The translations under genes and the position numbers were made by a program. This document shows, one piece after another, positions 1,829-62,237 of a DNA stretch of 64,000 nucleotides. The stretch's first letter is position 1, and every line of letters starts with the position of its first letter. The notes beneath the pieces were generated by a model, which searched no databases, was not told where the DNA came from, and worked only from the letters and a program-made list of their open reading frames with translations. Source of the stretch: Octopus bimaculoides (Eukaryota); NCBI RefSeq assembly GCF_001194135.2, contig NC_068986.1, positions 20,553,349-20,617,348 of the forward strand. Reading direction: 5' to 3'.

Positions 1829-2856
1829 TCTCATCATTGTTTAATGTATACCTTCCATGCTGGTATGGGTTGAATGGTTTGACAAGAGCCGGTCAGGTAC
1901 AAGACTACACCAAGTTACTGTCTGTTTTGGCATGGATTTTACAGTTGGATGCCCTTCATAACATCAACCACTCCATAGAGTGGACTGATTGCTTTCTTTG
2001 TGGCACCAGTACAGGCGAGGTCAGTTTTGGCATGGCTTTCACTGCTGGATGCCCTCCTAAATGCCAACCACTTCACAGTTTGGACAGAATGCTTTTTACA
2101 TGGCACCAGTGGAGGGTCTTAAGTTCTTTGTCTCAAATTGGTTGCAGTAAGTAGCTTCCACTATATATAAAATAGATGATGTGGTCCTTGATCAGATATT
2201 TAGAGATCTCCAACACACTTATGTGCGGAGAAAAAGATTCACCCTCTTAGGTACAGTGTTTGACTAATGTAAACACTTGTAGTTGCATGGATTTGTCGTC
2301 AGTTTTGTACGTCTTTTTTTCCCCCCAGTTTTAGAGTCTTTGCGTTTGGATGAAATGCCCTGAAGTATCACTCTATTAAATACTAATCCATTTCTCTCCA
2401 TGTTCTTATTTTGTGTACATTGACATACTAACTAGCATTACCCTTTCTCCTACACAGGTAATGTTCCTCATCCATGCACAACCTCACACAAGACTTGGCA
2501 CTGCTTTCACAAAACAGTAATTTCAAATCCTTCAATGAGAACTTACCTTTTTGGGCACACTCACTTATTACACATGTCAAGGAAATAGTTTTACATCACA
2601 GCCTTCTTATTTATAAAAACAAATTCCTCTTCTAGACCTTACGCACTTTGACTTTCCCTTTTAATATCACTTACACCATTTGGAAGACTGGGTTTTATTT
2701 TCAGGACTATGAGATATTTTTGTTCTGATCAGTTACCATTTTATAAAGCGCAAGTGTGTATAGATATTTGGGAAAGTGCTGTTGTTGTACACATATAAAC
2801 ATCTGCTTTAACAGTCACTCAACTGATTACGTTCACCAATCCCATATATATAAGAA

Positions 2857-3478
2857 CCATCTCTTCTCCCACCATTATGACTTCTCTGAACTCGTAAACT
2901 CCATTCTGCTCCCACTCAGAGCTTAAAGTTTTATCCTTTCATCATCTCTTTGTAATTCTAACTCCTTTCCCCACTCCTCTGCTCAATATTTTTTAGTGTC
3001 TAATCATCCCTTTAGAATTTGTTCTTCTTTGACCGGCAGAAGTTGAAACTAAGCACAGAAATTATGTAAGAGGATAGCTTAAATGGTAGAACATGAGAAA
3101 ATGCTTTACAGAATTTTGTTAAAATCTGGCAGCTTTCCTTTTTGTCTCTCTTGGGTAGTTGTGAACTGAGGTCCTTTAAATTGATTTGACCTCTATCTAA
3201 AAATGTTGCCTTTTGCCAATGTCTGCAGTCTCCCTCCCTCTTTCTCTCTCTCTCCCTTCTCTCAGCATTTACAGCATCCAGCTGTAAAAGCCTTGCCAAA
3301 ACTAACCTTGCCTGTGCTTGTGCCATGTAAAAAGTTCACTCTGCTGAGTGGTTGGTGTTAGGAAGGGTATCCAGCTGTAAAGATCCTGCCAAAACAGTCA
3401 CAGAAGTCTGGTGCAGGCTTCTGCCTGGTCGGTTCCTGTCAAACTGTCCCAGCATGGAAGGCAGATGTTAAACGATAG
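2857..3478 (+). mobile_element. Retroelement 3' fragment with RTE-type tail; inverted homolog of 18025-18782
   Basis: High identity by eye (~85-90%) to the reverse complement of 18025-18782 once the nested SINE is removed. Confidence 0.75.
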
Positions 3479-4315
3479 CCTCTACAGCTGGATATCCTTT
3501 GTAATGCCAACATTACAATGAACTGTAATTTTTTTCATGGCACCAATACTATGGAGGTTGCTAAGAAACTTGCTTAAATAAAGAGGACTCTTGTCTGATT
3601 GGGTGTTTGGTAAGGAGGAGAGCAACTTTACACGAGGTGTTTAGTGGTTAAAGTATGCTACAAGGGATGGGGACAATTTTCTTGCTGTAGAGGAGATATA
3701 TAGATACCTCGCATTATGTGTGTGTGTGGGTGAGTAATTAGGTTGGAGTGGATTAGAGAACTAGAAATAATTGCAATGATGTCTGTGGTCTCAAGTACAA
3801 GGCGGAATAAAAGTGTGGGTGCAAGTCAGATAGATTGCAGGAGTGTATGGGCTGAGTGAGAGATGGCTTGAGATGTGAGAAGTGAACAAGAGTGGAATGG
3901 GAGTTAGTGGAAACTGTGTTGGAAGGGAGTTGGGCGAGGGGAAGGAGTGACTGACAGTTCAGAAAGGGTGAAAAGTAACAAAATAGTAATAGAGTGGATG
4001 GGGGAAAGATGATGGAAAGGAAGGTGATGGGTGGGTGGTGAATGTGAGACATGTAGTGATAAGATGCAGTCAGAGGTACACAGGGTTAAAGTGAAATGGC
4101 TCAGATGAAATCAAACTTGTGATGACAGTACTGAAGTTGACAGTCTAGCTCTACAAAAATCTACAAAAGGCTGTATATATATGTATATAGGTGCAGTTGT
4201 GTGGTAAGAAGCTTACTTCCTAACCACATGGCTCAAGGTTCAGTCCCACTGTGTGGCACCTTGGGCAAGTGTTTTCTACTAAAGCTTTGGGCTGTCCAAA
4301 GCCTGAAAGAAGCGC

Positions 4316-4354
<39 letters not shown>

Positions 4355-4678
4355 TCATCGTCGTTTAACGTCCGCTTTCCATGCTAGCATGGGTTGGACG
4401 ATTTGACTGAGGACTGGTGAAACCAGATGGCTACACCAGGCTCCAATCTGATTTGGCAGAGTTTCTACAGCTGAATGCCCTTCCTAACGCCAACCATGTA
4501 TATATGTCTATGTGTCTTTGGTATGTTTTTGTCCCTGTAACTTAGCTGTTTGGCAAAAGAGACCAATAGAATAAGTACTAGGCTTAAAAAACACAAGTCC
4601 TGGAGTTGATTGTTCGACTAAAACTCTCCAAAGTAGTGCTTCAACATGGCTGCAGTTAATAGATGAACAACTAAAAGA

Positions 4679-4709
<31 letters not shown>

Positions 4710-4725
4710 NNNNNNNNNNAAAGAG

Positions 4726-4757
<32 letters not shown>

Positions 4758-5080
4758 TAAAAGTTTTAAGAGTTGAAGTACTTTGTTAATGAAGTCATTT
4801 GACAGTTCAGATAAAAAGTTATGTCTAGTATGTACATAATAAATACTAGACATCTATATTTTGTAAAAATCTACATGGTTCCAAGGCTAGTTTAAAATAG
4901 TTTTTGCTATTTATGTACAATATGTCTAAGTAGTGATGTTGCTTTGGTGTAGTGGTTATCACAGCTTAGAAGTGTTAATCATTGTCAAGTGTTCAAATTT
5001 GTCCTGGCAGTGTCACAGCTTTTCTTCATTGTCTGCTGTATTCTCTCTCTCACACATATACATCTGAGTGGTTGTGTGTA

Positions 5081-13499: not shown

Positions 13500-13834
13500 T
13501 TAAGTATACTGTCATATAAGGTAACTTCTCGTAAAGCTGCCAATTATTAGTTACGCATTAGAAGCATGTTTAAAAACAAATCTTCTCTTACCTGAGCCGG
13601 TGCAGCAAATGGAACAAGCATAAACATCTGGTTTAATATTTCCCTTTTAATAAAGTTTTAAAACCTAAAGGAAATTTCTTAATGCTAATTAAGAGTACTC
13701 CCTGACCAATCATAAGAACTGAAAATTATTGTTGAGGTCAGTGTACCGAATGGGAAAATATTGGGCACCATTTTCTATGAAAAACAAGGGAAGCAGTTTG
13801 TAGTAGCTGAGTGTCATTACGGGACTAAACAGAC

Positions 13835-18024: not shown

Positions 18025-18782
18025 TCATGATTGTTTAAATGTCTGCCTTCCATGCTGGCATGGGTTGGACAGTTTGACAGGAGCTGGTCAGGCAGAAGCC
18101 TGCACCAGACTTCTGTGACTGTTTTGGCAGGATATTTACAGCTGGATGTTGTTAACATCAACCACTCAGCAAAGTGGACTTAGTGCTTTTTATGTGGCAC
18201 TTAGATAGAGGTCAAATCAATTTAAAGGACCTCAGTTCACAACTGCCCAAGAGAGACAAAACAAAGCTGCAGCATTTTAACAAAATTCTGGAAAGCATTT
18301 TCACATGTTCTGCCATTTAAGCTATCCTCTTACATAATTTCTTATTTTTTTGTTGTTGTCCACAAGGGGCTAAACACAGAGGGGACAAGCAAAGACAGAC
18401 AAAGGGATTAAGTCGATTATATCGACCCCAGGGCGCAACTGGTACTTAATTTATCGACCCCGAAAGGATGAAAGGCAAAGTCGACCTCGGCAGAATTTGA
18501 ACTCGAACGTAGTGGCAGACGAAATACTGCTAAGCATTTCGCCCGGTGTGCTAACGTTTCTGCCAGCTCGCTGCCTTCTCTTACACAATTTCTGTTAATC
18601 AACAGCATTTGCTTTCAACTTCTGCAGGTCAAAAAAGAGCAAATTCTAAAGGGATGATTAGACACTAAAATATATTAATCAGAGGAGTGGGAAGGAGTTA
18701 GTTACAGAAGAGATAATGAAAAGACAAAACTTTAAGCTCTGGTGGGAGTAGAATGGAGTTTACTAGTTGGGAGAAGAGATGG
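18025..18782 (-). mobile_element. Retroelement 3' fragment (same family as 2857-3478), interrupted by a SINE
   Basis: Reverse-complement match to 2857-3478 on both sides of the nested SINE. Confidence 0.75.
18343..18577 (-). mobile_element. Young tRNA-derived SINE with a Nin/MESC-like central domain
   Basis: Minus strand GAGTTCAAATTCTGCCGAGGTCGACTTTGCCTTTCATCCTTTCGGGGTCGATAAATTAAGTACC; 16-bp TSD CTCTTACATAATTTCT (18327-42) / CTCTTACACAATTTCT (18578-93); CpGs intact. Confidence 0.85.
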
Positions 18783-21295: not shown

Positions 21296-21364
21296 GATTT
21301 GTATTGTGTACGGAGTGACCTGGGTAACTTGCTCAAGGCATTGGGGCGATTGGATGAGGCAAAG
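21296..21364 (+). CDS. OGT: OGT exon 4-equivalent (69 nt): [23 protein letters not shown]
   Basis: tacag|GAT…AAG|gtaaaa (weak donor). Confidence 0.98.
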
Positions 21365-22532
21365 GTAAAATATGTACTTCCTGTGTCATGAAAATTTTAC
21401 TCCACACCTATATTTTGTGTAAATAAATCTATATATTACATATGTGTATATAGATATGTCTGAGTGCATATATATAAACATATATATATAAATATATCTA
21501 TGTATTTATATATATGTGTGTGTGTACATATATGTATGTATGTATGTCTGAGATTGACTGTCAATCTTTTCTTTTCCTTTGTAATATACAATATTGTAGA
21601 TATGGGATCAATTTATCCATTTAACTGTCTCAAAGATGTTAAACCATCCTTTGTCAAATCTATTTAATAAGTTTTTATCTTCTGTCAGAAGACTGCAGTG
21701 TGGTCATGTTGATTTTCCCGGGATTCCCTGTTTTTCTAGATGATGGAGCTGGGGCTTGAACATATCTGGACATTTTGTTTCTTTTTAAAAATTCAGACAA
21801 AAAAATGAACGCATTACTTAGTTTATTTATTTATTTTTTTGTTTGAATTTTTACCTGAAATTGCTTTCGATTTCCTTATCATCCTCATTTACTTTGATCA
21901 GTTAGACCCTCCAAATAAAAGCCAAATTTAAATTGTGTTTCATAATTGTATATTTCACACTTGAAAAATGGAAATTTCCTTTAGAATTAGTACTTATTTT
22001 GTATTGCTAAGCAGATATGAATCCAAGCTCGATAGATATTGATGGCAGATATTCCAATTTGATAAAAACTAGCTCAGCTTGTAGTTATGTTTCATAAATT
22101 GAAACCCAACAAAGCATTTTACCATGCAATATATAAAGCTGTTTTCTCAAACTAATTTTTTTCTAAAATACGAGACTCCACGATAGTATGAAAAACAGTT
22201 AATTGAAATTTCTGCTTGGTCTATTTATAACTGTTGCGGTTAAGCAGTTTAGTTATCGAATGTATTTTATTAGAGAAGGCTTTTAGATTTAAAGCAAAAT
22301 ATTTCTTGATAATTTGCTTGTCACCTATTGTATAGCTAATGAATTTAGAGGGAGAGTTAAATCTAGAATGACTTGTAGAATAAAGGTTTCAAACCACTGC
22401 GTTCTTTACAAATGGGGGAGGCATCCTTATCGCTACATTTGAACAGGTCTTCTTTGAACCAGCACTAGACCTAATAGATGTATTATCTTTTGATTAATCA
22501 TTCTTGTTAGAGAAAAAGTAAATCATTTTTAA

Positions 22533-22747
22533 CCCCTTTGTTACCCTGTTTTTGTTGAAACACCCGTGCTTTGTTTCAATTAATTTTGGAAATAGTGAAT
22601 AAGTTATTAAAATAACCTGGTCGTTATTAAAGCTGTTGTTTGGAACATAAATTAACATGAAATTCTGAGGGAAGGTTTTAAGATTATTTTAAAACAGTTT
22701 GTTTTATGAAGGCAAGGGTGGGTTCTGGCAGGTTGGTATCTAAAGGG
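22533..22747. mobile_element. piggyBac-type MITE (subfamily 2)
   Basis: TTAA|CCCCTTTGTTACC…GGTATCTAAAGGG|TTAA. Confidence 0.75.
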
Positions 22748-25700
22748 TTAAGTTTGTATGTGTATAGTGGGGAAAGTGGAAAACTGCATGTAACTATGTT
22801 ATGTAAGTGTATGATGTGTGTGTCTATATATATGCTCACATGCATTATTGAACTAAGTTGATAGGTTTACATTAGAGTTTTATTTGAAATTTAATGATGA
22901 TGATAAATCATCTAAAAGTGATCTGGCTAACTGACAGTTGGTTTTTCAATAATTAATCAGCAGGTTAATCTGTTGATTCAGTAAGGGGTTTTTTTTTTTC
23001 ATTTGCATGTTGAAATTTATACCTTGCATATTAATTAGATTTAATCTCTTATTTAAATGGGGGAATGAACCTGCTCTCTCTAATCCATATTTAGCTTGAT
23101 CTAGCATTCTGTTTATGCTGTCATGTAGGGATACATATTTTATATACTCATGTTTGAGAAATTTTGATCTTAGCCATGTAGAGAAGTAAATAAGATACTA
23201 ACTTTGTTAGTTTAGGATTGAACAGCCAATTTGTACTTTTGCTCTGTTACCTTCTACCTCTGTTGACAAGTAAGAGAAACAGAAGTTCTTGTTCAGTGGT
23301 GCATTACCACTTGCATGAAATGAACTTGTAACTGCAGCAAAAGTTTTATTACTTTTATAATTGAAAACCCTTTATATTTTCCCCTTAAAGTGGAATTGTT
23401 AAAATGATCCAATGCATTGAAAAGTATTTTTTTTAAGGATTTTGTAAAACAGAATATTCTCTTATGAAATACACCTGAATTTTTTTTTCTTTGTCATTTT
23501 CTTCCTATATTTGATTTCCCCTTTTGAAAGATCCTTGCTTCTCCAAGAAATGTTCTGTTGATAATTTTTTTCCAAACTTTTCTTTGAGATACAGGCTAAC
23601 CTTTTCCCCTCCCCTTCTACCTAAATCTTCATACATTCTGTCCTGAGGGATAGGGGAAAAATACCACAAAACGATCTAGACTTTCCCAGGAGAATCAATG
23701 ACCACTCTGCAACCTTAAAATTTTGAGATTCACAGGAAGGAAGTTCAGGCTGGTCGTGGTTCCCTTACATACTGGTTCTAAACTTAAAATTCAAAATAAA
23801 ATCTTTTCCAAATTTCTGAATGTTTTAAAACTTCAGCTGCAATCATATTATGTATATATTTTTGCCTGAAGTTTTTCTGATTTAAGTGACCAACTTTTGT
23901 TTGATAAAGCCTTTTGACTTTAATTTAAAATCTTCTACCATAAAAATTGTTTTTGTATCATAATTGCTTTATCAAAATTAAAAAAACCCAACAACCCCCC
24001 CCCCCAAATTCCAATAGAATTTTCAAGCTTTTTAGTATCCAGTATGTATGTGCATTCTGAGCCAGCCTTAACTTCCAATCATTGCTATCATATGTTATGA
24101 AAGCTGGAACCCCTACCAGTTAACCCCAACACCATTTAAAAGATTATACTGCAGGATGCTGAATGAAGCCAACTACTACTACTATTACTCAATGGAGTGT
24201 GAACTGTTTGCATTGCAGCACTTGCTGTTTAATATTGAGGGAGAAAGCAAGGCTTGAACTAGTCTTGCTAATACTGCCACAATGTCAGTCAGGATCCAAT
24301 TGCTCCCACTGTTATTTATATTAGGACACATTTTATAAATTTAGTTGTCACATGTCTTTAATTTAATGTCAATGCTTTCTAAAGAAAAGAGAAAAGGACT
24401 TGGCAGCGCCTCTTAAAATTCATCTAAGAAACTGCATGGGAAAAAATATATATAAGAAAAAAAAAAAGACTTGGAAATAAATATTTTCCTTAGAATTTAA
24501 AGAAAAAATATTGCAATGTCTAGTCTTCTGTTGTCATTACAACACATTGCTTAGTTCCTGTGATTTATATTGTTCTTGTAGTATAATGACAATTATCTGT
24601 AGAGGCATATCTACTTCTCTTTTCTGTATATGGTTCCCATAGTGCATTTTTTTACACTCTTTGTACTCTTTGCCAATTTATCTATTTTACTGTTACTACT
24701 TATTACCACTACTACTACTACTATTGCTACTCTTTTTTAACTACAACTAGTAAATGTGCGCGCTTTTAAGTTCTTGTTATGTCGTCAATCTGTAAGCTAT
24801 TTTGTGTCTAAAACGAAAAACCAAAAGTACGAAAGTATATGGAACACATGTGCTAAACATTTTAAAACTTTTTTAAAGCTTAGAATTTTTAGAAATACAC
24901 ATTTTCCTTTTTTTTTTCCCTCCTTTTTTTCCGTCTGTCTCTTGAGTCGGTATATAATACAGCAATACCATCCTGGCTACATTGTGCAGTATATTTACAT
25001 TGACAAAGGATTGTTTAACTGCTTTAGGGATAGATAAGATACTTTATTGTTTTGTAAAAAATTAAGTTCAAATCACTACAGGACAATGTTTATTGAATGT
25101 GTAAGACTTCCAGTTACAAATGATGCAACATTTTGTTTTTTATCATTTTGAATAAATTTTTGATTTCATATTCTTTTCTTAAAAATTGGTCAGAACAGTG
25201 GAGATGGCTGAAGCAGCAGACTGCCAGGCTGATGCTTTGATGTAATTAGTTTGGTACCTCACTGTTCTAAGTTCAAATCCCAATTGGACTGACATTTTTT
25301 TTTTGCATACTTTGAGATGAAATTGGCCCTAGCAATTTATTGGTGTACTTAATTCAACAAATCTTTCCCAACCCCAAAAAATGTGCCTGATTCCTGATTA
25401 TGGCAACTGTAGGAGGTAACAATAATGATATTGTTAAATGTTTACTTCATTATTATTAGCTTGCTATTTTGAAAGGTAACCATAATGAAAATTTAAATCT
25501 TAAAGAACTTGAATGAATTCTTATTAATTTATAAAAGCAAATTAGTTTGAGTGGGATACAAATTTCAGTATATATGTATATATATATAGAGCAATCATGC
25601 AGACAAATGTCAAATTTATATAAGAATATTCCACATTCTACAAACATCTCTTTGTGGAGAAACTGTTTTGATTTTAGCTGTAAAGCAGTTTAGTTTGATT

Positions 25701-26609
25701 TGAGTTACAAGATGGACTTGCATATTTAGAGCTCTACTAAAGTAAACTTAGTGGGTAAAATCATAGGACAAATGCCACTCTTAAGTTTTGATGATTCTTT
25801 TGGTTAATTTGTTGTTTAATGGTCTTTTAAGAATTGTTCCAATTGTCTTCATATATGAAGGATTTATATTGCACCAATGTGTGTCTGTTAAAGGTCATCA
25901 TTTAATGCTTGTCATGTTAGATTTCCATTTGCAACCTTATTACATAAGATGTGAATCAGCTGCTTACTTGGTGTCCGAAGCAGATGTTTTAATGCAGTTG
26001 TAGATTAGTGATAATTTTATGTCAACTTTTCATTCTGGGATGGGTTCCATGTCTCATGTCCAAGTCAGTGATTACTTGGAGATACTTCCCCCTCAAAGAC
26101 AAGTTGAAAGACCATTTCATTTTTGGTTGCAGCTGGATGCCCTTCATTCATTGACCACTTTACCATGTCTACCAGATGCATTGTATTGTGGGACTCACAC
26201 TAGTCTTCATTACTCTGTAATGTGTTTGTTCACTCAAGATAACAGGTCTTGTGAAGGTGATTACAAGAGTGATGGCAAACAGTGAACCAGGCTGGGTCAG
26301 TGAAAGTTGAGGGAGTGTAATGTTAGGAGAGAAGGTGAGGGTAGTAGAAGAGAAAAGTATGATGGATAGAGGTGGGCAATGATGAGTGATAGGTATCAAT
26401 AGCAAATGGCTTCTGGCGGGAGAGAGAGTGATGATTGGTAGTGCAGAAAGGGTGTTCTGGGGTTGTATCTGGTACTGCCTGAAAAAAGAGAGTGAATAGT
26501 CGAGTAATTTAGATGGAGCTGATGTAAACTTGGGAGCGACCTGTGTATGTGTAACTAACGCACACACACAAGAAATTTAAATATATATATGTATGCGTAC
26601 AGGTAGCTT

Positions 26610-27180
26610 ATATCTTTTAACCACCATCGTTTTTGACATTTCACCTTGCTTGCACAAGTGGACAGACCTTCTCCAGCACTGCAGGTTGCCAAGCATGTTA
26701 GTCCTTTGTCATCTCCTACATGGATCTAACCACCAGTCTTCATATTATCCCATATTGTGTTTTTCTATAGGTTCCATCCACTTTGAGTGCCCTGCATTTC
26801 TTCGTACAACTTTTGTCTTATACATTGTATATCCACACCAGCACAGTTGTATCTGTCATACTCTACATCTGATATTTTTAATATCTAGTTTGCCACACAA
26901 CTCATTTGCATTCTGTTATTGTTCATGCATAACACATCTGTCAGAGCATGTTCGCTTCAATTCTTTTTAGTCTTCCCTTTAAGTCTTCTGCTTTAAGAGC
27001 TTGCATCAGAGTGAGTACACAGGCATCATAAAAAATTTCCATTGACTCTGAAAAAGAAACCCTTTGTAACTTCCTCCAGGCAATAGCTCCTTGAACTTTC
27101 TCCAACTTGTTTTGCCCTGGCTACTATACTTTTGCACTTACCTTCATTGTTAATTTGGTCACCAAAATTACAGACTACTT
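26610..27180 (-). mobile_element. Decayed RTE LINE 3' fragment
   Basis: Similar to the 8300-8900 RTE segment; minus-strand wording resembles the RT C-terminal region. Confidence 0.55.
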
Positions 27181-27835
27181 CTAGGGAGCCTTCTGGGCCT
27201 TTCAGAGAATCTGTTTCCTGTGTGCGCTATTCCTGAAAATCTACTGGATAATATTTTATACAATTTGAGCATTTTGAGCAAACCTATATGAAAACTAATA
27301 GCAAAGCTGCTTTTCATATCAAAAATACTGTTTTGGATAAAGTTAAAAGCTTAAAACTGTCTTTGAAATTGATGTTGAGTTGCATCTATCACTTTCCAAA
27401 AAGCATAAAACTACATACCAGAAGTTAATAATAATTAAAAAAAAAATATTTTTCAACTGGTCAGTACAAGATTCCATAGTAACTAAATGTACAAGCCAAT
27501 AAAATACATTTTATAAGTATAATCACCAAGTATTTTGTGGTAGCTGGTAATAGACATTTCTTTTGTGTAATCCTTTTCCAAGGAAGGGTGCGTCACCATT
27601 TGGTCATGAGGTATAGCTTGTGATTTAGCCCAAATTTAACATTTTAGTGCTGAATAATATTCAAAGGGCAAAGGCTAGGATATAGTAGCCTCTACCTATT
27701 TTGAAATGGATTTGAACACAATCCAAGAACTAATTCATTAAATTTCACTTGTCTGTATTAATACTGACAACATATTTGATTTCCATATGTTGTTATAAAT
27801 TATACATAATAAATTTTCCTTAATGGCTCGTGTGC

Positions 27836-27874
27836 ATCTCTTCAGGTGTGTATCTCTTCAGGTGTGTATCTCTT
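27836..27874 (+). repeat. 16-nt tandem repeat ATCTCTTCAGGTGTGT x2.4
   Basis: Units at 27836-51 and 27852-67, partial unit at 27868-74. Confidence 0.9.
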
Positions 27875-28343
27875 GACCATGGTCCTGCCCCCCACCCCCG
27901 TGCTTAACAGCTATTTTGTAAACCTCAAAAATTGAATATTTTATTTTGTTCATGTAATATATAAATCCATTGACCTGTTAATCTGCAGTTGATGTAATGG
28001 TTGTTTGCTCAATGCTCTAATCTGCCAATATTTCACACACACACACACACTAGTAGGATCAATTTAGTTCATAATTGAATCACTTCTGTGGAGTAATGCT
28101 TTACTAACAAAGGATTCATAAAAGGCACTATTTTATATTTTTCCCTCAAAAAACAAAAAAACGGTTGACAAATTTTATTGTCCTTAATAATTTTAAACTG
28201 GGAGTTACCCATTCAATAAAATTCCTGTGGATTGATTTTAATCATTTTTCATATTTTTAAAAACTTGACTGCTGATTATTCACTGTTGTCAACATTCTGT
28301 ACCACTGAACACTAATGATCGTCTTTTTTGATTTCTACACAAG

Positions 28344-28616
28344 CAATGCAGGTGTGCTCACTGCTATCAAATAGTGTGCCCGCCTGGTCAGTCAGTCACT
28401 CGTGTCTCCTGGGTCAGTCACTAGCTGTGGGTCGGTCAGCGGTTGGTCATCTTCTACCTACTCCCGGCCCAGCCTGGCCAGGGCAGGCTGCTGCAGCAGC
28501 ACCAGGACCAAAGGACAGACTCCTCCTAGTTGACTACTACTACAGAGCTATGAATGAATACATTGGTATTAGTAGACATCTCTGAGGTGTGAGCTGAAGG
28601 TATTGTATACTTAAAT
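28344..28616 (+). other. Candidate decoy/poison cassette exon in OGT intron 4
   Basis: GC-rich island in an AT-rich intron. Acceptors AAG (28343) and CAG (28351) follow a T-tract. Candidate donors at 28587, 28589, 28600 and 28617. Stops TAG 28422-24 or TGA 28583-85, depending on the acceptor. Confidence 0.55.
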
Positions 28617-31476
28617 GTGAGTCAATTTCAGTTGTAGTCCCTGGCTATTTGTCTCCTATTTCTGCAGTGTAATGACATCTCTTTTACTGATTCATGATGG
28701 TCAAGTGTGATTTGGGGCAGTTTGGATTGCAAATTTCACCACCTAATGACATATATATATTTTCCTTTGGTTATAGTTTTTGCTGCTGGCTTTGAAACTG
28801 TTTTCCTCTTCATTGTTATAAAGGACACAGCTTAATTTGACTCCACCTTCAAAATTGTTGATGGAAGTAATATTTGTTTTAATTTCAGTTATCTTAGATG
28901 ATGAGAAAGCATTTAGTTCATATAACAGTTGAAATTTCTCTTGACTAATAATAGAATATTCTTATCACTGAATTAAAAAGAAATACTAATTTAAGAACCG
29001 ACAGGATTAACTAATTTTAGTTTACCCTCTCCTTTAAGTTTTACAAAATGCTGGTCTATAAAAATACACCCTTTAGATGTTGTAGTGTAATAAAAAAAAA
29101 TGTCTATATAATTTAGTAGATATATCTTTTTTATTGCATCTTAAAGTGTCTTTAGTCAAAACCATTCACTTGATTTAATTATGTGCAGTTCTCTTCTTGG
29201 AATTGATTTTGAATGCTGAAGGCGCACCCTTGGTATAAGAACTTCATTGGCAAAACATGCTGCAAGGGCAACAACCTGTTCACACCATGGTTGTTAAGTT
29301 TTTTTTTTTTTTCATTCACTGTTTTCTTTGGCACACTGCAGTTTATTTGTTGACTCTTAGTTCTCTTGTATTTAGCCCCTTTCTAGTAATAAATAGTCTT
29401 TTGTTGCTGTCATAAATGTTTTCCAAATTTTTTTTTTTTAAATAGATATTTTGTATTTGATTTTGATTTGTTTAAATTGTATAACTTATATGGAATTTGA
29501 AATTCTAATTGATATAGTTGTGAACTATTTGATTAAACATAGCTTTTTTGGTAAGTACAGCTAACTGAGAATATTCATTGAATCTAGTTAATTTAGCATT
29601 TTTTTGTTTTGTTTCGAAATCATTTTTGATTTCGCATCTGTTTTTGAAAGGAGACGACAAAAAACGTAATTCTGTGTTTTAACCTTTTAACACCTCAAGT
29701 GGTGTTAGTAGAATATATTGAAGTGTTTTTTGTTTTAATTTTTTTTTCTTGAAAGAATTATTACAATTTACAAATTTGCCCTGGTAAGAACCATTATGGC
29801 AAGACTTCATTTTTCAAAATCAGCTTAGTTAAGTGGATATTTTATTTTTGTTTCAACTTACTGTATGTTTAGTATACTTTTTCTTTATACAGTGTAATAG
29901 TTCTAGTTCTTCACGCAATCAATTTTCTGAATAATATGCTATATATATATGCTTTTCTAGTTTCTGAGGTAGGTGTAAGAAGTAACTATTGAAGGAGATG
30001 ACTGAAGAAAATCATTGTTCAAGAATACACGGTGTAGGATTAGGACTGAATCTTGCTCAGAAAATCTGCATCTTAAATGCCATCGGCACTCCTTTAGTTA
30101 TGGTAATCTTAGTAACAGCATATATTTGAAGTATTTGTATTTTATATCTACTTAATATGTATGCAAGAGAATGTAGGATGCTGCATGGTGAAATGGTTTT
30201 GGAGAAGTTACACATCGTCACACGACTCATCGAGTAACATTGAATGTTTTACACTTGGTCTTTCAATGAAGATTCCCTGCTGTTGTTTCCTATTGGATTC
30301 CTAGAAGCCTACAATTGCACAATGTTCTGCTTTCTCAGTGTGCAGTAAACCATGAAGAGTTACAGATCTTTACCAGTGACAGGATGTCAAACCAGATACA
30401 TTGAAATCAAAATGGAACAGTATAATTTATTTTACTCAATATAACTTTCCATGGAAGTTTAAAAAAAAAGCAAAATGCAGTTTCATATAAGATATATTTG
30501 GAATGCTGCTTAGTTTCAAATTATTTTAAATTACCTGAAATATAATTTTGATACAGTGTTTAATTGATGATGATGATGATGATGATGATCACTCATATAG
30601 TATGAAGATGCTTTCCCATTCTTTGCTTGATCTATTATTTGCTTGAGCTGTATTTTGCTCAAAAGTTATGGCAAGGAAATTAGTTAAAAGCTACTGCATG
30701 TATGAACCAGTATTTTTGCATTTTATGAAATGGAATTTCTTCAAAATGTAGTCAGTGTGTCACATAATTAAAATTTTCCATCAGAAATTGGTTGATAAGG
30801 GCTGACAGAAATAGCATATTTTCTTTTATGCATTATTTACAGTAGAGGATTCCTGTTTCATGTTTTTTTTTCATTATTATTGTATGAGGAATTTGTCCCA
30901 GAATATATATTAAAGTGTTGTTTTTTTTTCTATTTAAGTAAAAGGGTGAGAATTTATGTCCTTGCTTTCTGCTGAGATTATTAGTGATAGAATATTTCTT
31001 GTTTGGTTTCTTTGAATGGTGATTTTGTTTTCTTTTCCTCTCTCTCTTTCTTTCTATCCTACTGTCCCATGTAACAGCTTTACCTCTTTATGCCATTATA
31101 CTGCAGTTGAAAGGATATTGATATGCCCTAAAATACAAGAAAAATAGAAAACAAAAACACCAGCATCAAATAACTTAATTTGTATTATTAAAAGTGACTA
31201 CTATAATACTGATTTTTTAAGGTTCTTTTCATATTTTTTCATACAAGCTTTTTTTTATAAAGTCATTTTTCATAACATCACTAATTTCTCCAAAATTATT
31301 GCTAATTTTTCAGAATAATTGTTTTTCTATCTTTTTTCATTTTTCTTCTATTAGATTTTTTTTTACATTTTTATTTCGTTTCTTTACAATTTTTTTCTTT
31401 GTCTATTTCATTTATATATTTCTATATCAGTATTTTTGTGTGTATGTATTTTATGCAGTTACTTTTTTATTCCCTT

Positions 31477-31521
31477 AGCGCGCGAAGCATTGCGCGGACG
31501 CACTTGATCGCAGGCGAATAG
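31477..31521 (+). promoter_or_regulatory. GCGC-rich intronic island 1 (candidate splicing-regulatory element)
   Basis: AGCGCGCGAAGCATTGCGCGGACGCACTTGATCGCAGGCGAATAG, directly after a ~280-nt T-rich tract and a TAG; shares three motifs with island 2. Confidence 0.5.
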
Positions 31522-32400
31522 ATAATTTTTTTTTAGATGTCAGATTTCTTCTCTTGTATTTTAAAGTTTCTTCATCTTGCCATGGATGACTTGGATGTCT
31601 TCAATTTATCCAAAATTTTTTGACTGATAAATTCTAAAAGTACATTTTAATTCACTTTGGGCTATATAAATAACACCTTATTTAAGTGTTTTATTTTGCA
31701 AAATTTGTAATAATTAGTGAAGGGAGTGTCAGTTTTTCAATGTTAACAGCAATATCGTGTTTTAGTTAAGGAAAAATTAAAAAGAAAACGAGCAGAAGTT
31801 TTCATTGGAATAATAACTAGAGTTAGAGAAATACTTCAAAAAGTCATGTGTGTGTGGCTACCCATGAGATGAGGCAGCTTATTGGGAGAAGAGAAGTGAA
31901 ACCTAATTATTTTATTTCACCAAGCAGAACGGCTTTCTTCTCCTATTATTACAAGAGAAGAGAAATGACATCTTTATTTTTTTTTAAATTTTTTTATATA
32001 CATATATATTTAATTCCATATATGTATGTATATAAAATGCGTGAATGTGTGTATGCATATATATGTGTGTATATATGCATATATATATATATATATATAT
32101 ATAATTTTTGTTTTACTTTGGTGTTATCAGCACAAGTCATCACTAATGTATGGTTTATAGAACCAAAGTTTCTTTTAGCAGCTAACGTTTCAAATATATA
32201 ATTAACTTAAATTTTAGATTTATTAAAATGTATTTATCAATATTTAATTTTACTTTTTTTTTCCCCCCCTAAAATAATTTCAATTTTTTCTTTTGCTAAA
32301 TCTCTAGATGATGCATTTATACAGATGTTAATTTGTTAGGTTGCCTAAGAAAACATGGTTCTAAAATCCTATATGCATGGTTAGTGCTTAACACAGTATT

Positions 32401-32463
32401 ATTGCGCGCGTTTAGTTCATAGTGCAAAACTTCTACTGGAGCGCAGGCGACTTGAGCGCTTTG
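32401..32463 (+). promoter_or_regulatory. GCGC-rich intronic island 2 (candidate splicing-regulatory element)
   Basis: ATTGCGCGCG…GAGCGCAGGCGACTTGAGCGCT, ~95-155 nt upstream of the exon-5 acceptor. Confidence 0.5.
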
Positions 32464-32557
32464 CTTTTGGATGTTCTTTTTAACTTTCTTTGTCTTTTGC
32501 AAACCTGTACAAACATCATTTATTTTGTTTATAACTGTAAATTTGCCTACACTTTAG

Positions 32558-32734
<177 letters not shown>

Positions 32735-57547: not shown

Positions 57548-58020
57548 CATTGCTATGTAGATACTGGGTTTTATCTCGCTGTGCTGCACCTTGGGCAAGT
57601 ATCTTTTAATAGCCTCGGACTGGCTGATGACTTGTGATTGAAGTTTGGTAAGGGTGGGGGGAAAATTTTGCTGAGTCCTGTGCGTTTATATTTTGGCACC
57701 ACTCTGAAGACTGGTGTTGTTGCTTGTGCCCTTTTTTTAATGTCCCATAATGTTGCAGTTTGACAGTTAGAATTGATTAAAAAGCTGCTGGTGTTAATAC
57801 CATTACTTACAACCCCTTGGAGACGGTACCCCAGCAGGGCTGCAAGTTAAAAGACTGGAACCAGTACAAGAATGTCTCTGTGTGTATGTATGTATATACA
57901 TATATGTGCGTGTGTGTGTGATTCAATGTGGGTTAGGGACTCTGAATGGATTTTGTGAATAAGTTTTCCCTCCTTTTTATCCCTCTGTGTGTGTGTGTGT
58001 CTATATACACACACACACAT

Positions 58021-58057
<37 letters not shown>

Positions 58058-58535
58058 GGTTTTGTATGTTTGGCAAGTTGATGACTCATTACAAGAGATG
58101 AACAACAGGTTGACTGCTGTCAAGTGTCGTCTCGTTTTGTTTACATGGATAATTTTTACCTGCAGCACAGTAGTAGCAACAACAATGATGGGAAGCTAGC
58201 AATTGACCTTGTAGTTCGTAATACCTCCTTCCCCTCCAGCTACTGCTGCTTCTCTCAATTTCAGGGTAATTATGGTAAAAAAAAATAAATATTTTATATC
58301 TTCATTGAAATAACTTACAATGCAATCTCTTAGCTAAAAACATCATTGTATGCCTTCATTTTCCTGGTTTTTCATGTTATGTTTAAGAATTTGGCATGCA
58401 TTTTGAAGATCAGGGAATGGCTTTTCCCTCCCTTGGTTCTTTTTTTAATATTTAGGTTTAAAATTTCTCTTCTTACAAAGAATATTAGATAATAGGCGTA
58501 GGAGTGGCTGTGTGGTAAGTAGCTTGCTTACCAAC

Positions 58536-59519
58536 NNNNNNNNNNNNNNNNNNNNNNNNNNNNNNNNNNNNNNNNNNNNNNNNNNNNNNNNNNNNNNNNN
58601 NNNNNNNNNNNNNNNNNNNNNNNNNNNNNNNNNNNNNNNNNNNNNNNNNNNNNNNNNNNNNNNNNNNNNNNNNNNNNNNNNNNNNNNNNNNNNNNNNNNN
58701 NNNNNNNNNNNNNNNNNNNNNNNNNNNNNNNNNNNNNNNNNNNNNNNNNNNNNNNNNNNNNNNNNNNNNNNNNNNNNNNNNNNNNNNNNNNNNNNNNNNN
58801 NNNNNNNNNNNNNNNNNNNNNNNNNNNNNNNNNNNNNNNNNNNNNNNNNNNNNNNNNNNNNNNNNNNNNNNNNNNNNNNNNNNNNNNNNNNNNNNNNNNN
58901 NNNNNNNNNNNNNNNNNNNNNNNNNNNNNNNNNNNNNNNNNNNNNNNNNNNNNNNNNNNNNNNNNNNNNNNNNNNNNNNNNNNNNNNNNNNNNNNNNNNN
59001 NNNNNNNNNNNNNNNNNNNNNNNNNNNNNNNNNNNNNNNNNNNNNNNNNNNNNNNNNNNNNNNNNNNNNNNNNNNNNNNNNNNNNNNNNNNNNNNNNNNN
59101 NNNNNNNNNNNNNNNNNNNNNNNNNNNNNNNNNNNNNNNNNNNNNNNNNNNNNNNNNNNNNNNNNNNNNNNNNNNNNNNNNNNNNNNNNNNNNNNNNNNN
59201 NNNNNNNNNNNNNNNNNNNNNNNNNNNNNNNNNNNNNNNNNNNNNNNNNNNNNNNNNNNNNNNNNNNNNNNNNNNNNNNNNNNNNNNNNNNNNNNNNNNN
59301 NNNNNNNNNNNNNNNNNNNNNNNNNNNNNNNNNNNNNNNNNNNNNNNNNNNNNNNNNNNNNNNNNNNNNNNNNNNNNNNNNNNNNNNNNNNNNNNNNNNN
59401 NNNNNNNNNNNNNNNNNNNNNNNNNNNNNNNNNNNNNNNNNNNNNNNNNNNNNNNNNNNNNNNNNNNNNNNNNNNNNNNNNNNNNNNNNNNNNNNNNNNN
59501 NNNNNNNNNNNNNNNNNNN
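58536..59519. other. Assembly gap (984 N); smaller gaps at 4710-4719, 12269-12391, 39154-39163, 52372-52381 and 57232-57250
   Basis: Runs of N. Confidence 1.
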
Positions 59520-61109
59520 TTTTTAGATCTACCAAATTATTAATTTTATTAATAATGATGTAAAAAAAACAAAGCAAACATATACATATTTTTTTTTTTT
59601 TTGAAAAGATATGATGATGATGATGAATTCCTGGGACTTAGTAAGAAAAAAAAAAATAATCTACAGAATGACTCTAAAAGCATAAACTAAAACAACTCTT
59701 TAAAACACTTGGACACATAAAACAACAAAGAAAAAAAAACAATAGAATTCTGAGGAATTTCTGATTGTTGATATATAGATATATGTATATACATATATCT
59801 CAAGAGTATGTATATTTAATTTTATTATACTTTGTGCATACTTTGTATCTGCGTACATAGACTGCATATTGATTTGTTTGGTTCATTTTTGTTATTTCTT
59901 AATATTTTCAGTAACCTGCTTTAATGGTTAAGTTTTTTTCTTTTTTTTTTTTGTATATTACACCCTCCCTTCTTTCTTTCCTCCCATCTCTTTAATGATA
60001 AAGAAATAAATTAGGTATTTATTGCTCTTGATCTATTGTGTAAGTCTTTTTTTCTCTTTTATGTCTGTCACCACTATCACCACCGTCATCATCATCGATT
60101 TAACTGCCACTTTTTCATGCTTGAGTGACTTTGATGGAATTTGCTGAAGTACATTCTCTTCGATCAGATGACCTTCATGTTGCCAAATATCACTGGTTTC
60201 CCCCCAAAGGCCAGACATGTTTTTCATGAAAGATTGAAAATAAGGGACACCACTTGGTTGACAACTATGTTGCGATGTGAAGACAAGGGGAGACAAACAC
60301 CCACATACACTGCTGGGGTTTCGTTTAAGTTTCGTCTGCCAAATCTAGTCAAGGATTTGGTTGGCCTTTGGCTATAGTACAAGACACCCAATGTACTGTG
60401 CAATGAGACTGCCCTATACTGTTCGGTTAGGAAGCATCTTGTGAATCCCACAGCCGTCCTTGCACTTGAACATTTTCCTTCCCAGCGGGGGATCGAACTG
60501 TGGTCTCCTGCTCTACAAGCAGAAATATTTATCCTCTCTACATTACCTAGGAACATTATTCTATTCAAAGCCACGGTTTCAGCCTGACTACCTGCTGACG
60601 TTCTACACAGCTGAATTTCACGTTGTTAGTCTCGTGTCTCAAGGTGCTCGTTCAGTCAATATTGGTCAGCTTGAAGAATTAAAGATTCTACAACATTTCT
60701 TATTTGATGCAACACGAAATTTTGTCAGTGAACAGGTTGCAGTTTCAAAGCGAAAATATTTTGACAAATTAAATTTAAATGTTGAAGTGAATCAAACGGT
60801 TTTTGTGTGTTTTTTAAATGGCTAATAAACACTTTCCATGCTGCAATTGTTTTTGTTTCAGCACATGATCTCAGATCAGGTCACGTGCTATGCAAGTACA
60901 TCTCTGCAATTATTTGAATCTGTTACTGTGAAAAATGCAAACACGATGTCGTGAACACAGAACCTAAATGACTCGTTTTGTAAACGTAATCACCATCACC
61001 ATTATTTGAACATGCATTACAGGCTGCCAAACGTTACCTGTTTCCAAACCAGCTACCAATTCTCTGACCTTTTGGAAACGGATTCTGCTGGTTGCATATT
61101 GGTGACGTT

Positions 61110-61390
61110 TTTCTTTTATTCTTTTGTTCCAGTCATTTGACTGCAGTCATGCTGGAGCACCGCCTTTAGTCGAACAAATCGATCCCAGGACTTATTCTTT
61201 GTAAGCCTAGTACTTATTCTATCGGTCTCTTTTGCTGAACCGCTAAGCTACGAGGGACGTAAACACCAACATTAGTTGTCAAGTGATAGTGGGGGATAAG
61301 CACACACATGCACACACGACAGGCTTCTTTCACTTTCCATCTACCAAATCTACTCAAGTCTTTGGTCGGCCCGAGACTATAGTAGAAGAC
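61110..61390 (-). mobile_element. Composite SINE copy with CpGs retained
   Basis: ccagtcatttgactgcagtcatgctggagcaccgcc…ttccatctaccaaatctactcaagtctttggtcggcccgagactatagtagaagacac. Confidence 0.7.
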
Positions 61391-62237
61391 ACTAACCCAA
61401 GGTGTTTTAACGTCCACTTTTTCACACTTGCATGGATCAGACGAAGTTTCTATATCAACTTAACGAATCACTTATTGTCGCTGTTTACAACTGTGAACTT
61501 TCGATACTTTCAGCTGGAGAAATTATTGGAGGAATAAATGACTGAACCATCGCAAAATGCAGTAGAATCCCGGCTTAACAGATAAAGCGCTAAGATCACG
61601 TTAAGTCTGGAGTTGCTTCCCTTACATGCTAACATTTTTTTTAGTGCCAGTATTTGGCGGATATTTCATTATAAAGGTTTCGAAAGGGATAGATGCCAAT
61701 GTGATTTCCGAGGGATTTCAGATCAGCAGGATAGCTTAGTCCAGAGGCAGAATGAGACGTCACATGAAAGTTCACCAAAACAATGCTGTGACATGTATTG
61801 CAAGAAGCTGTCACATTTGTATGAAAGAATGTAAATGTTGAGCTGGACGGAAAATCCACATCCGCGCTGTTCAATGTTTCAGAAAACAATCAAGTGATGA
61901 CATTACAGGAAATCGAGTTGCTGCCAGTCTGTCTTTCCACGAATAGAGACTTATCGTCGTCATAAATGACTATCAAACATAACCATTTATATTCGGTATA
62001 AAGGATTCTCATATACAGCCTAATCTTGTATTTATGATTTAAAGCAGAACATTAATTTTATTTTTCATTTTTGCTCCACCTGTGGCCTTTCAGTGAACCA
62101 AAGCGAATCCAGTGGCTGGATTTAGTAAAATAATATCCCAAGTTCTCTTGAGATGGACGGACGTAAGACGGCCCTGATTAACTTCAGTATGGACCTCCTA
62201 CCCCTGCTGGGCAAATAAACACACTGGGCCCTATATT

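What the first reader, a model, noticed from the sequence alone, without database searches (positions are those of the whole stretch)
31477..32463. Two CpG-rich GCGC islands 0.9 kb apart sharing three exact words
Both islands contain ATTGCGCG (31489, 32401), CGCAGGCGA (31509, 32442) and ACTTGA (31502, 32450), despite strong CpG depletion in this gene body. Island 1 folds CGCGCGA-AGCA-TTGCGCG (7 bp). Island 2 folds AGCGC-AG-[GCGA, a GNRA loop]-CT…GCGCT. The two GCGCGCG runs could alternatively pair with each other. From memory and unverified, the distal part of human OGT intron 4 also has GCGCA-rich blocks, including ATTGCGC and GCGCAGGCG, shortly upstream of exon 5. If true, this is a non-coding motif conserved between octopus and human.
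Basis: partly seen in the sequence, partly recalled or inferred. Interest (0 to 1): 0.85.

Follow-up and report, generated by a model that had tools for sequence, protein, structure and literature searches.

The report
CpG blocks in OGT's regulated intron
Two short CpG-rich patches near the end of one long intron of the O-GlcNAc transferase gene are real, and similar patches recur at the same place in bivalves, mammals and many other animals, next to a conserved "poison" exon, so they are probably parts of an ancient splicing switch that controls how much of this enzyme is made.

Summary
All the shared words sit at the stated coordinates. The two islands are the two CpG-densest non-coding 50-mers in the 40-kb OGT coding span.

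The intron (21365-32557) is the positional orthologue of vertebrate OGT intron 4, the detained intron.

A distal and a proximal CpG block also occur in Mytilus, Tegillarca and oyster. In 22 animal introns CpG density is biased toward the 3' end.

Oyster transcripts include a 72-nt poison cassette exon in this intron that resembles the vertebrate decoy exon. An octopus counterpart lies at about 28352-28565.

Three results limit the claim. The blocks are not alignable across phyla (nhmmer not significant). They share only a vocabulary of short words. The proposed hairpins and island-island pairing are no more stable than shuffled sequence.

Strand-asymmetric enriched words (GCGAT, TGCGAT, GCAGCG, CAGGCG) and the position next to splice signals favour pre-mRNA splicing-regulatory elements. 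NRF1-like DNA sites remain a rival. Function is untested.

The parts
21296..21364 (+). OGT exon equivalent to human exon 4 ([23 protein letters not shown])
   Evidence: tblastn and translation
21365..32557 (+). Intron orthologous in position to vertebrate OGT intron 4, the detained intron. It is 11,193 nt, GC 0.32, CpG observed/expected 0.26, with a weak 5' splice site AAG|GTAAAATA.
   Evidence: same intron position in narwhal, sturgeon, bivalves, tick, L012 and the sponge Sycon
28310..28351 (+). Branch-point-like CACTAAT, a polypyrimidine tract and CAG. This is the putative 3' splice site of the candidate decoy/poison exon.
   Evidence: sequence reading
28352..28565 (+). Candidate decoy/poison cassette exon (214 nt, GC 0.56 in a 0.32 intron). 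It reads open from exon 4 for 71 codons, and inclusion frameshifts exon 5 into a stop. Alternative 5' splice sites lie at 28599|28600 and about 28615. It contains AGTCAC three times and GCCTGG..AGGGCAG..CTCCTCCT words like the vertebrate decoy exon. There is no RNA evidence for octopus.
   Evidence: homologue demonstrated in oyster transcripts
28599..28607 (+). GGTATTGTA (within GAAG|GTATTGTATAC), a pseudo-5'-splice-site element. It is unique in the intron. It occurs once each in Mytilus, Tegillarca, oyster, L029 and L038, 13-45 nt downstream of the cassette 5' splice site. The vertebrate analogue is ACGG|GTTTGTAAC.
31457..31478 (+). Polypyrimidine tract (agttacttttttattccctt) plus AG directly abutting island 1, forming a pseudo-3' splice site
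   Evidence: the same arrangement occurs before the distal block of oyster and Tegillarca and before narwhal/sturgeon block 1, where a conserved CTAAC branch point is also present
31477..31521 (+). Island 1, the distal CpG block: AGCGCGCGAAGCATTGCGCGGACGCACTTGATCGCAGGCGAATAG (8 CpG)
32020..32103 (.). (TG/TA)n microsatellite between the islands. It is not part of the element and accounts for the sub-threshold mir-297/466 hits.
32400..32463 (+). Island 2, the proximal CpG block: TATTGCGCGCG...GGAGCGCAGGCGACTTGAGCGCTTTG (6 CpG)
32457..32557 (+). AG-exclusion zone, with the branch-point region and polypyrimidine tract of the authentic 3' splice site. The last upstream AG (32455-32456) is inside island 2, so island 2 abuts the zone in which the branch point must lie.
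32558..32674 (+). OGT exon equivalent to human exon 5 ([39 protein letters not shown])

Best explanation
The two islands are the distal and proximal members of a set of short CpG/GCGC-rich blocks. Such blocks mark the 3' part of OGT 'intron 4' in molluscs, vertebrates and many other animals. They sit downstream of a conserved premature-stop cassette ('decoy' or 'poison') exon.

I propose that they act in the pre-mRNA as intronic splicing-regulatory elements. They would be binding platforms for a still unknown factor or factors recognising words such as GCGCA/UGCGC, CGCAG(G/C), (C)AGGCG and GCGA(U/A). Island 1 follows a pseudo-3' splice site. Island 2 lies at the upstream edge of the branch-point/AG-exclusion zone of the true 3' splice site. 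Together with the decoy exon they would hold the intron unspliced or route it to the poison isoform, setting OGT output as in the vertebrate O-GlcNAc feedback loop.

Shown: gene and intron identity, the words, the CpG statistics, recurrence across taxa, the oyster poison exon, intron-4-only retention in environmental RNAs, and strand-asymmetric word enrichment.

Inferred: that the octopus intron is detained, that the islands affect splicing, and that a protein reads them.
For: - Intron orthology is established.
- The islands are the top two CpG-dense non-coding windows of the gene. The same holds for the distal and proximal blocks of Mytilus (6 and 5 CpG against a next-best 2) and oyster (7 and 6 against 3). 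Five of the top 7 windows in narwhal and the top 3 in sturgeon lie in intron 4.
- Over 22 introns the CpG-densest window is biased toward the 3' end (KS p=0.005). It lies within 450 nt of exon 5 in 10 of 22 against 4.8 expected (p=0.008). CpG density in the last 450 nt exceeds the rest (p=0.001).
- Narwhal block 1 lies inside the window corresponding to the experimentally necessary 526-nt human intronic splicing silencer (ISS) and is nearly invariant in sturgeon (nhmmer E=8e-9).
- Park et al. state that additional cis elements are needed for O-GlcNAc-responsive de-repression.
- The RNA-level machinery is old. Oyster RNA-seq contigs splice a 72-nt stop-creating cassette between exons 4 and 5. 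It ends ATG|GTAA like the vertebrate decoy and is 98.6% conserved against 90-92% for coding exons.
- Six environmental sequences are uninterrupted except at this one intron.
- Enriched 3'-proximal words are strand-asymmetric: GCGAT 18:4, TGCGAT 9:0, ATGCG 23:6, GCAGCG 18:4, AGGCG 10:2, CAGGCG 5:1.
- The blocks share more local similarity than dinucleotide shuffles predict (11 of 55 pairs p<0.05 against 2.75 expected).
- Island 1 abuts a polypyrimidine tract plus AG, and island 2 abuts the AG-exclusion zone.
Against: - There are no RNA data for this organism, and no other cephalopod intron could be obtained.
- Cross-phylum and even cross-bivalve block alignments are not significant.
- Many of the words are palindromic (xTGCGCAx, GCGCGC), and CGCA and TGCG counts are about equal. 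That pattern also fits dimeric DNA-binding sites.
- The best NRF1-like matches of the whole window fall exactly in the islands.
- The 22-23 introns are not phylogenetically independent, and many are from unidentified organisms.
- Island 1 lies 2.9 kb from the decoy anchor, against 175-380 nt in bivalves.
- No known RNA-binding protein could be assigned.
- In humans the decoy exon alone explains most of the retention.
Confidence: 0.45

Rival explanations
1. DNA-level element. The islands are clusters of CpG-containing transcription-factor sites, with the best match to the palindromic NRF1/Ewg site YGCGCAYGCGCR. Factor binding would keep them unmethylated in a methylated gene body. They would act as a small intragenic enhancer or internal promoter, or as a pause site for RNA polymerase.
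For: - The only two matches with at most one mismatch to GCGCMYGCGC in the 64-kb window are in island 1 and island 2. The only such site in the Mytilus locus is its proximal block (GCGCATGCGT). The only perfect site in the 33.7-kb narwhal locus is block 3, 212 nt upstream of exon 5.
- Many words are palindromes (TTGCGCAA, ATTGCGCAAT, CTGCGCAG, CGCATGCG).
- Survival of CpGs in a CpG-depleted gene body fits protection from methylation.
Against: - Several enriched words are strongly strand-asymmetric.
- The NRF1 consensus was recalled from memory and the matches carry mismatches. A CpG-rich GCGC vocabulary will produce such near-matches by itself.
- The putative internal-promoter product (mOGT) is not conserved, and its transcript is the intron-retaining RNA.
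- The octopus has a stop codon directly before exon 5 and no ATG in exon 5.
- The blocks co-occur with a demonstrably RNA-level module.
Confidence: 0.2
2. RNA-structure element. The islands would form local hairpins, or the GCGCGCG runs would pair with each other across 0.9 kb. That would loop out the intervening RNA and present or hide the 3' splice site.
For: - The 7-bp island-1 hairpin is the predicted minimum-free-energy fold.
- GCGCGC is self-complementary and present in both islands, and also in both oyster blocks.
- In an AT-rich intron the two GC-rich islands are each other's most stable partners.
- CAGCAG and CUGCUG are both enriched near exon 5.
Against: - Local folds and distal-proximal duplexes are no more stable than dinucleotide shuffles in all four molluscs (z from -1.2 to +0.6).
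- GCGCGC is absent from the proximal blocks of Mytilus and Tegillarca and from narwhal.
- No covariation could be assessed because the blocks do not align.
- There is no Rfam match.
Confidence: 0.1
3. No specific function. The islands would be chance or neutral CpG-rich remnants, for example of an old insertion, a local duplication or a mutational cold spot. The cross-species resemblance would reflect composition only.
For: - Alignment-based homology is not significant.
- The single-word matches (a 9-mer, and 10-11-mers across species) are individually near chance expectation.
- Spacing and order of the words differ between islands and between species.
Against: - The top-two CpG windows fall in the same part of the same intron in octopus, Mytilus and oyster, and narwhal and sturgeon show concentration too.
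- The 3'-end bias holds across 22 introns.
- Vertebrate block 1 is conserved over about 430 My.
- Block-block similarity exceeds shuffles.
- The islands are not a repeat in the window.
Confidence: 0.15

Closest known systems
Vertebrate OGT intron-4 detention module: the intronic splicing silencer (ISS) of Park et al. 2017 (PMC5588854), the 143-153-nt decoy/poison exon of Parra et al. 2018/2020 (PMC6097662, PMC7373989), and the regulator SFSWAP (PMC12017769)
   Same: - The intron is in the same place in the same gene.
- It is long relative to its neighbours.
- It holds a stop-introducing cassette exon followed by a second pseudo-5' splice site (ACGG|GTTTGTAAC in vertebrates, GAAG|GTATTGTA in molluscs).
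- CpG/GCGCA-rich blocks lie downstream toward exon 5. Narwhal block 1 lies within the ISS window.
   Different: - The published conservation limit is jawless fish, with no homology reported in fly, worm or zebrafish.
- The GCGC blocks themselves are not described as elements in those papers.
- The octopus and bivalve sequences are not alignable to vertebrates beyond short words.
- The octopus intron is 3-6 times longer.
- O-GlcNAc responsiveness is untested in any invertebrate.
Decoy-exon-mediated intron retention in other genes (SF3B1, ARGLU1 ultraconserved element, SNRNP70, DDX39B)
   Same: - A cryptic cassette exon with weak or multiple splice sites sits inside a long retained intron.
- Extra pseudo-splice-site motifs lie in the flanks.
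- The arrangement gives autoregulatory or homeostatic control.
   Different: - Those systems are defined by the exon's splice sites.
- No CpG-rich accessory blocks near the intron's 3' end have been described for them.
NRF1/Ewg palindromic promoter element (GCGCATGCGC; consensus from my own knowledge)
   Same: - A CpG-containing palindromic core.
- The best matches in the loci coincide with the proximal blocks.
   Different: - The octopus sites carry one mismatch.
- They are intronic and not at a known transcription start site.
- Neighbouring enriched words are strand-specific.
Autoregulatory poison exons of splicing-factor genes (SR proteins, TRA2B)
   Same: - A stop-introducing cassette conserved more strongly than the neighbouring coding sequence. 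The oyster cassette is 98.6% identical against 90-92% for coding exons.
   Different: - OGT is not a splicing factor.
- The sensor is presumed to be O-GlcNAc status, not the protein's own RNA binding.

Membership tests
OGT intron-4 detention module (vertebrate type) | Lies in the intron that splits ...LEEAK | [11 protein letters not shown]... | tested here: met
   tblastn of the window and of narwhal, sturgeon, bivalves, tick, L012 and the sponge
OGT intron-4 detention module (vertebrate type) | Contains a stop-introducing decoy/poison cassette exon with weak or multiple splice sites | tested here: inconclusive
   Demonstrated in oyster transcripts. In the window only a sequence-based candidate exists (28352-28565, with pseudo-5' splice sites at 28566, 28600 and about 28616; inclusion gives premature stops). 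There is no RNA evidence.
OGT intron-4 detention module (vertebrate type) | Alignable sequence homology to the vertebrate ISS/decoy region | tested here: not met
   blastn and nhmmer give no significant mollusc-vertebrate alignment. Only short shared words are found (CG.AGGTGCC.CGC, ATG|GTAA, AGTCAC, TAGCGCAAAG, CGCAAGCGAT).
OGT intron-4 detention module (vertebrate type) | The intron is retained in nuclear poly(A)+ RNA and responds to O-GlcNAc level | not testable with these tools
   There is only indirect support. Environmental contigs that are otherwise uninterrupted carry this one intron or a short cassette.
NRF1/Ewg binding site | Match to GCGC[AC][CT]GCGC | tested here: inconclusive
   There is a one-mismatch site in each island, and these are the only such sites in 64 kb. 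Narwhal block 3 is a perfect match. The consensus was taken from memory, and no occupancy data are available.
Thermodynamically stable RNA hairpin or long-range helix | Folding or duplex energy below that of dinucleotide shuffles | tested here: not met
   z from -1.2 to +0.6 for folds; duplex z from -0.1 to +0.6 in four molluscs
Thermodynamically stable RNA hairpin or long-range helix | Compensatory base changes across species | not testable with these tools
   The blocks do not align well enough, and no cephalopod sequences were obtainable.
Classical CpG island | At least 200 bp with GC above 0.5 and CpG observed/expected above 0.6 | tested here: not met
   The islands are 45 and 64 nt. The 878 nt between them have GC 0.26 and 5 CpG.
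Dispersed repeat or transposon fragment | Further copies elsewhere | tested here: not met
   There are no significant self-hits in the 64-kb window. A genome-wide test was not possible.
Curated RNA families (Rfam 15) | Covariance-model match | tested here: not met
   The only hits are sub-threshold matches to the microsatellite, and nothing falls on the islands or on narwhal intron 4.

The most novel reading that the evidence does not exclude
The whole OGT autoregulatory detention circuit predates the protostome-deuterostome split. That circuit comprises the poison/decoy exon, a pseudo-5' splice site and CpG/GCGC-word blocks next to the 3' splice site. On this reading the CpG blocks, including the two octopus islands, are the conserved 'additional cis-acting sequences' through which an O-GlcNAc-sensitive factor makes intron removal responsive to nutrient state.
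Probability: 0.25. Interest if true: 0.85.

Novelty: new variant of a known kind. Interest (0 to 1): 0.62.

Why it matters
OGT is the only enzyme that adds O-GlcNAc. In vertebrates its level is set by regulated detention of intron 4. The factor that senses O-GlcNAc, and the cis elements that confer responsiveness, are still unknown.

The literature places the origin of this mechanism in vertebrates. The data here show a homologous poison exon in oysters and recurrent CpG-word blocks from molluscs to mammals. If the blocks are functional, comparison across phyla narrows the search for the sensor to a small vocabulary of RNA words and a few tens of nucleotides. These can be tested directly in human cells by masking blocks 1-3 with antisense oligonucleotides.

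It would also add one of the few non-coding regulatory architectures shared by protostomes and deuterostomes.

Tried and rejected
- **Cephalopod orthologues.** Two protein-index searches, one with the TPR half and one with the C-terminal half, returned no cephalopod OGT (best C-terminal identity 68%). Three look-ups found nothing on record.
- **Alignment-level homology.** blastn with 7-nt words was swamped by AT-rich noise. nhmmer with each block found only vertebrate-vertebrate matches. MAFFT of the mollusc blocks anchors only on the CpG cores.
- **RNA structure.** Local hairpins and distal-proximal duplexes are no better than shuffles. There is no Rfam hit.
- **Other transcription-factor readings.** E2F (TTTSGCGC) is found only in narwhal block 3. 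C/EBP (TTGCGCAA) is perfect only in Tegillarca and narwhal and absent from the octopus islands. Both were dropped.
[quoted passage not shown] The octopus has a stop codon directly before exon 5.
- **Repeat or transposon origin, and repeat-driven expansion of the 2.9-kb gap.** There are no self-hits and only small tandem repeats.
- **Micro-evolution between two oyster genomes.** There are 20 differences, none in the blocks, but only about one was expected, so the test has no power.
- **First decoy-exon guesses.** The ATG|GT sites at 30100 and 31016 were replaced by 28352-28565 once the GGTATTGTA anchor was found.
- **snRNA mimicry.** I considered whether the blocks mimic U4/U6 snRNA segments (the UGCGCA palindrome). 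I did not pursue it, because it rests on snRNA sequences recalled from memory and 10-mer matches are expected by chance.

Full report
**1. What is at the coordinates**

The window encodes O-GlcNAc transferase (OGT) on the + strand, with exons from about 16145 to 56209. The finding lies in the last 1.1 kb of an 11,193-nt intron (21365-32557). This intron separates the exon ending ...GRLDEAK from the exon [13 protein letters not shown]... (32558-32674). In narwhal the same junction flanks the intron that carries the published human decoy-exon morpholino target, that is, vertebrate intron 4.

ATTGCGCG, CGCAGGCGA and GCGCGCG each occur only at the two islands in 64 kb. ACTTGA occurs 20 times.

- CpG observed/expected is 0.26 in the intron.
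- Island 1 (31477-31521) has 8 CpG in 45 nt.
- Island 2 (32400-32463) has 6 CpG in 64 nt.
- The 878 nt between them have 5 CpG.
- The islands are the two CpG-densest non-coding 50-mers of the whole coding span.

Against dinucleotide shuffles, the shared 9-mer has p about 0.047 and six or more shared 7-mers has p about 0.004. That the organism is an octopus could not be checked.

**2.

No human DNA was available, so I fetched the narwhal OGT locus (L001). Its intron 4 (3,282 nt) contains ATTGCGC twice and GCGCAGGCG 212 nt upstream of exon 5.

It holds 17 of the locus's 31 GCGC tetramers. The densest clusters form three blocks of repeated (U)GCGCA(A/G), at positions -1151..-1108, -890..-831 and -212..-168 relative to exon 5. 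The decoy exon maps upstream of these blocks, at L001 about 13637-13779.

Block 1 falls within the region corresponding to the 526-nt intronic splicing silencer (ISS) of Park et al.. It is almost invariant in sturgeon and is preceded by a conserved CTAAC branch point, a polypyrimidine tract and an AG. None of the papers I read describes these blocks.

**3. Other animals**

No cephalopod OGT could be reached. I obtained loci for the following:

- Mytilus, Tegillarca and sturgeon
- oyster and tick
- an unidentified invertebrate (L012) and the sponge Sycon

The intron position is conserved in all of them, including the sponge. It is the long intron of its neighbourhood.

The three bivalves each have a distal and a proximal CpG block:

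| Species | Distal block | Proximal block |
|---|---|---|
| Mytilus | about -720 | about -95 |
| Tegillarca | about -610 | about -110 |
| Oyster | about -525 | about -90 |
| Octopus | -1080 | -155 |

. In Mytilus and oyster, as in octopus, these are the top two CpG windows of the gene. In narwhal 5 of the top 7 windows lie in intron 4, and in sturgeon the top 3 do.

A metagenome scan with exons 4-6 returned 80 further loci. In many of their introns the CpG-densest window is 90-450 nt from exon 5. Over 22 introns the bias toward the 3' end is significant:

- KS test against uniform, p=0.005.
- Top window within 450 nt of exon 5 in 10 of 22 against 4.8 expected, p=0.008.
- CpG density in the last 450 nt above the rest, Wilcoxon p=0.001.

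**4. The context is an old RNA-level module**

Many database isoforms from oyster, fish and springtail begin 'M + exon 5'. Oyster RNA-seq contigs explain this. Exon 4 is spliced to a 72-nt cassette (L005 3249-3320...CTCTTTATG|gtaatt) and then to exon 5, which makes a TGA across the junction.

The cassette is 98.6% identical between oyster species, against 90-92% for the coding exons. It shares CG.AGGTGCC.CGC and the terminal ATG|GTAA with the vertebrate decoy exon.

Downstream of the cassette, GGTATTGTA (a pseudo-5' splice site) occurs once each in oyster, Mytilus, Tegillarca, L029 and L038. It also occurs once in the octopus intron, at 28599. Just upstream of that site in the octopus lies a GC-rich, exon-like stretch (28352-28565). 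It has a branch point, a polypyrimidine tract and an AG, and its inclusion would introduce premature stops.

Six environmental sequences are uninterrupted except at this one intron. Others carry 56-230-nt insertions at the junction.

The published view is conservation only to jawless fish, and none in fly, worm or zebrafish. I found no paper reporting an invertebrate counterpart.

**5. What the islands are not**

- **Not alignable orthologous motifs.** nhmmer finds no significant mollusc-vertebrate or mollusc-mollusc block match.
- **Not specially stable RNA structures.** Folds and distal-proximal duplexes equal shuffles.
- **Not an Rfam family**.
- **Not a classical CpG island**.
- **Not a repeat in the window**.

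What remains is a shared vocabulary. Eleven of 55 block pairs exceed shuffle expectation at p<0.05, against 2.75 expected. These include cross-phylum pairs and the octopus distal/proximal pair. However, the distal block of one species may best match the proximal block of another.

**6. RNA or DNA?**

Two observations favour DNA. Many words are palindromes. The best NRF1-like matches (consensus from memory) coincide with the blocks: the only sites with at most one mismatch in the 64-kb window are in the two islands, and the only perfect site in the narwhal locus is block 3.

Four observations favour RNA:

- An unbiased k-mer comparison (last 450 nt against the rest, 23 introns) shows strongly strand-asymmetric enrichment: GCGAT 18:4, TGCGAT 9:0, ATGCG 23:6, GCAGCG 18:4, AGGCG 10:2, CAGGCG 5:1.
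- Island 1 directly follows a polypyrimidine tract and AG, as do the distal blocks of oyster and Tegillarca and vertebrate block 1.
- Island 2 contains the last AG before a 100-nt AG-exclusion zone that ends at the true 3' splice site.
- The neighbouring poison exon is demonstrably an RNA-level device.

The supposed internal-promoter product, mOGT, is not conserved, and its transcript is the intron-retaining RNA.

**7. Verdict**

The most likely reading (about 0.45) is that the islands are intronic splicing-regulatory elements of an ancient OGT intron-detention and poison-exon module, read by an unknown factor. The rivals are:

- CpG-dependent DNA sites (about 0.2)
- RNA pairing or structure (about 0.1)
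- no function (about 0.15)

The motif words do occur in mammalian intron 4, and the feature recurs across phyla, but as positional and compositional conservation with shared short words. It is not an alignable conserved motif or a supported fold.

The main limits are these. There are no cephalopod comparisons and no RNA data for this organism. Many environmental sequences are from unidentified and non-independent organisms. Narwhal was used as a proxy for human.

Noticed in passing
L005 3249-3320 (oyster); transcripts L008-L010: A 72-nt poison cassette exon lies in oyster OGT intron 4. RNA-seq contigs include it, which creates a TGA across the junction with exon 5. It is 98.6% identical between oyster species while coding exons are about 90-92%. 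It shares CG.AGGTGCC.CGC and the terminal ATG|GTAA with the vertebrate decoy exon.
   Followed up: yes
window 28352-28565 and 28599-28607: A GC-rich (0.56) exon-like stretch with branch point, polypyrimidine tract and AG. It reads open from exon 4 for 71 codons and is followed by the mollusc-conserved pseudo-5' splice site GAAG|GTATTGTA. It is the probable octopus homologue of the decoy/poison exon. It contains repeated GGTCAGTCAC units that look like weak 5' splice sites.
   Followed up: partly
L029, L038, L039, L043, L055, L077 (metagenome/metatranscriptome contigs): OGT sequences whose N-terminal 132-155 aa and following 297 aa are each uninterrupted. The single interruption is 756-2,641 nt exactly at the exon 4/5 junction. 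They are either intron-4-retaining RNAs or genes that kept only this intron. L035, L042, L051, L066 and L083 carry 56-230-nt insertions there.
   Followed up: partly
protein hits P0009, P0018, P0048, P0062, P0170, P0183 and others: Many database OGT isoforms from oyster, fish, springtail and unidentified organisms start 'M' plus exon 5 (M[AT]CYLKAIET...). This is what an ORF caller produces from decoy-exon-included or intron-retaining transcripts.
   Followed up: partly
L013 (Sycon ciliatum) 2025-5054; L012 1912-4301: The intron position between ...EEAK and (A/T)CYLK is kept even in a sponge, and the intron is long there too (3.0 kb). L012 has an annotated alternative exon inside the intron (-497..-396) that ends in a CpG cluster, plus ...gccATG|gtaagatattgtatg further upstream.
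   Followed up: no
L001 12876-12910 (narwhal) / L004 about -2357: A further CpG block lies upstream of the decoy exon (GCGCATGCTAATACGTGGAGTGTATGCGCAGCG). It is conserved in sturgeon (E=0.015) and is the reciprocal best, though non-significant, match of the oyster proximal block.
   Followed up: partly
window 60478-60553 (-) and 60000-64000: A tRNA-Tyr(GTA) gene lies downstream of OGT. This region is much less CpG-depleted (23-40 CpG per kb against 1-15 in the gene). A tRNA-like GC-rich sequence near 62461 was not called by ARAGORN.
   Followed up: partly
window 58001-60000: An extremely AT-rich stretch (GC 0.18 and 0.12 per kb) lies just after the OGT 3' end.
   Followed up: no
window 18414-18560: Two adjacent CpG-rich 50-mers (5 CpG each) in an upstream OGT intron look like a tRNA/SINE-derived insert (…ATCGACCCCAGGGCGCAACTGG…).
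   Followed up: no
window 32020-32103: A (TG/TA)n microsatellite between the islands gives sub-threshold Rfam hits to mir-297/466/1277. These are composition artefacts.
   Followed up: yes
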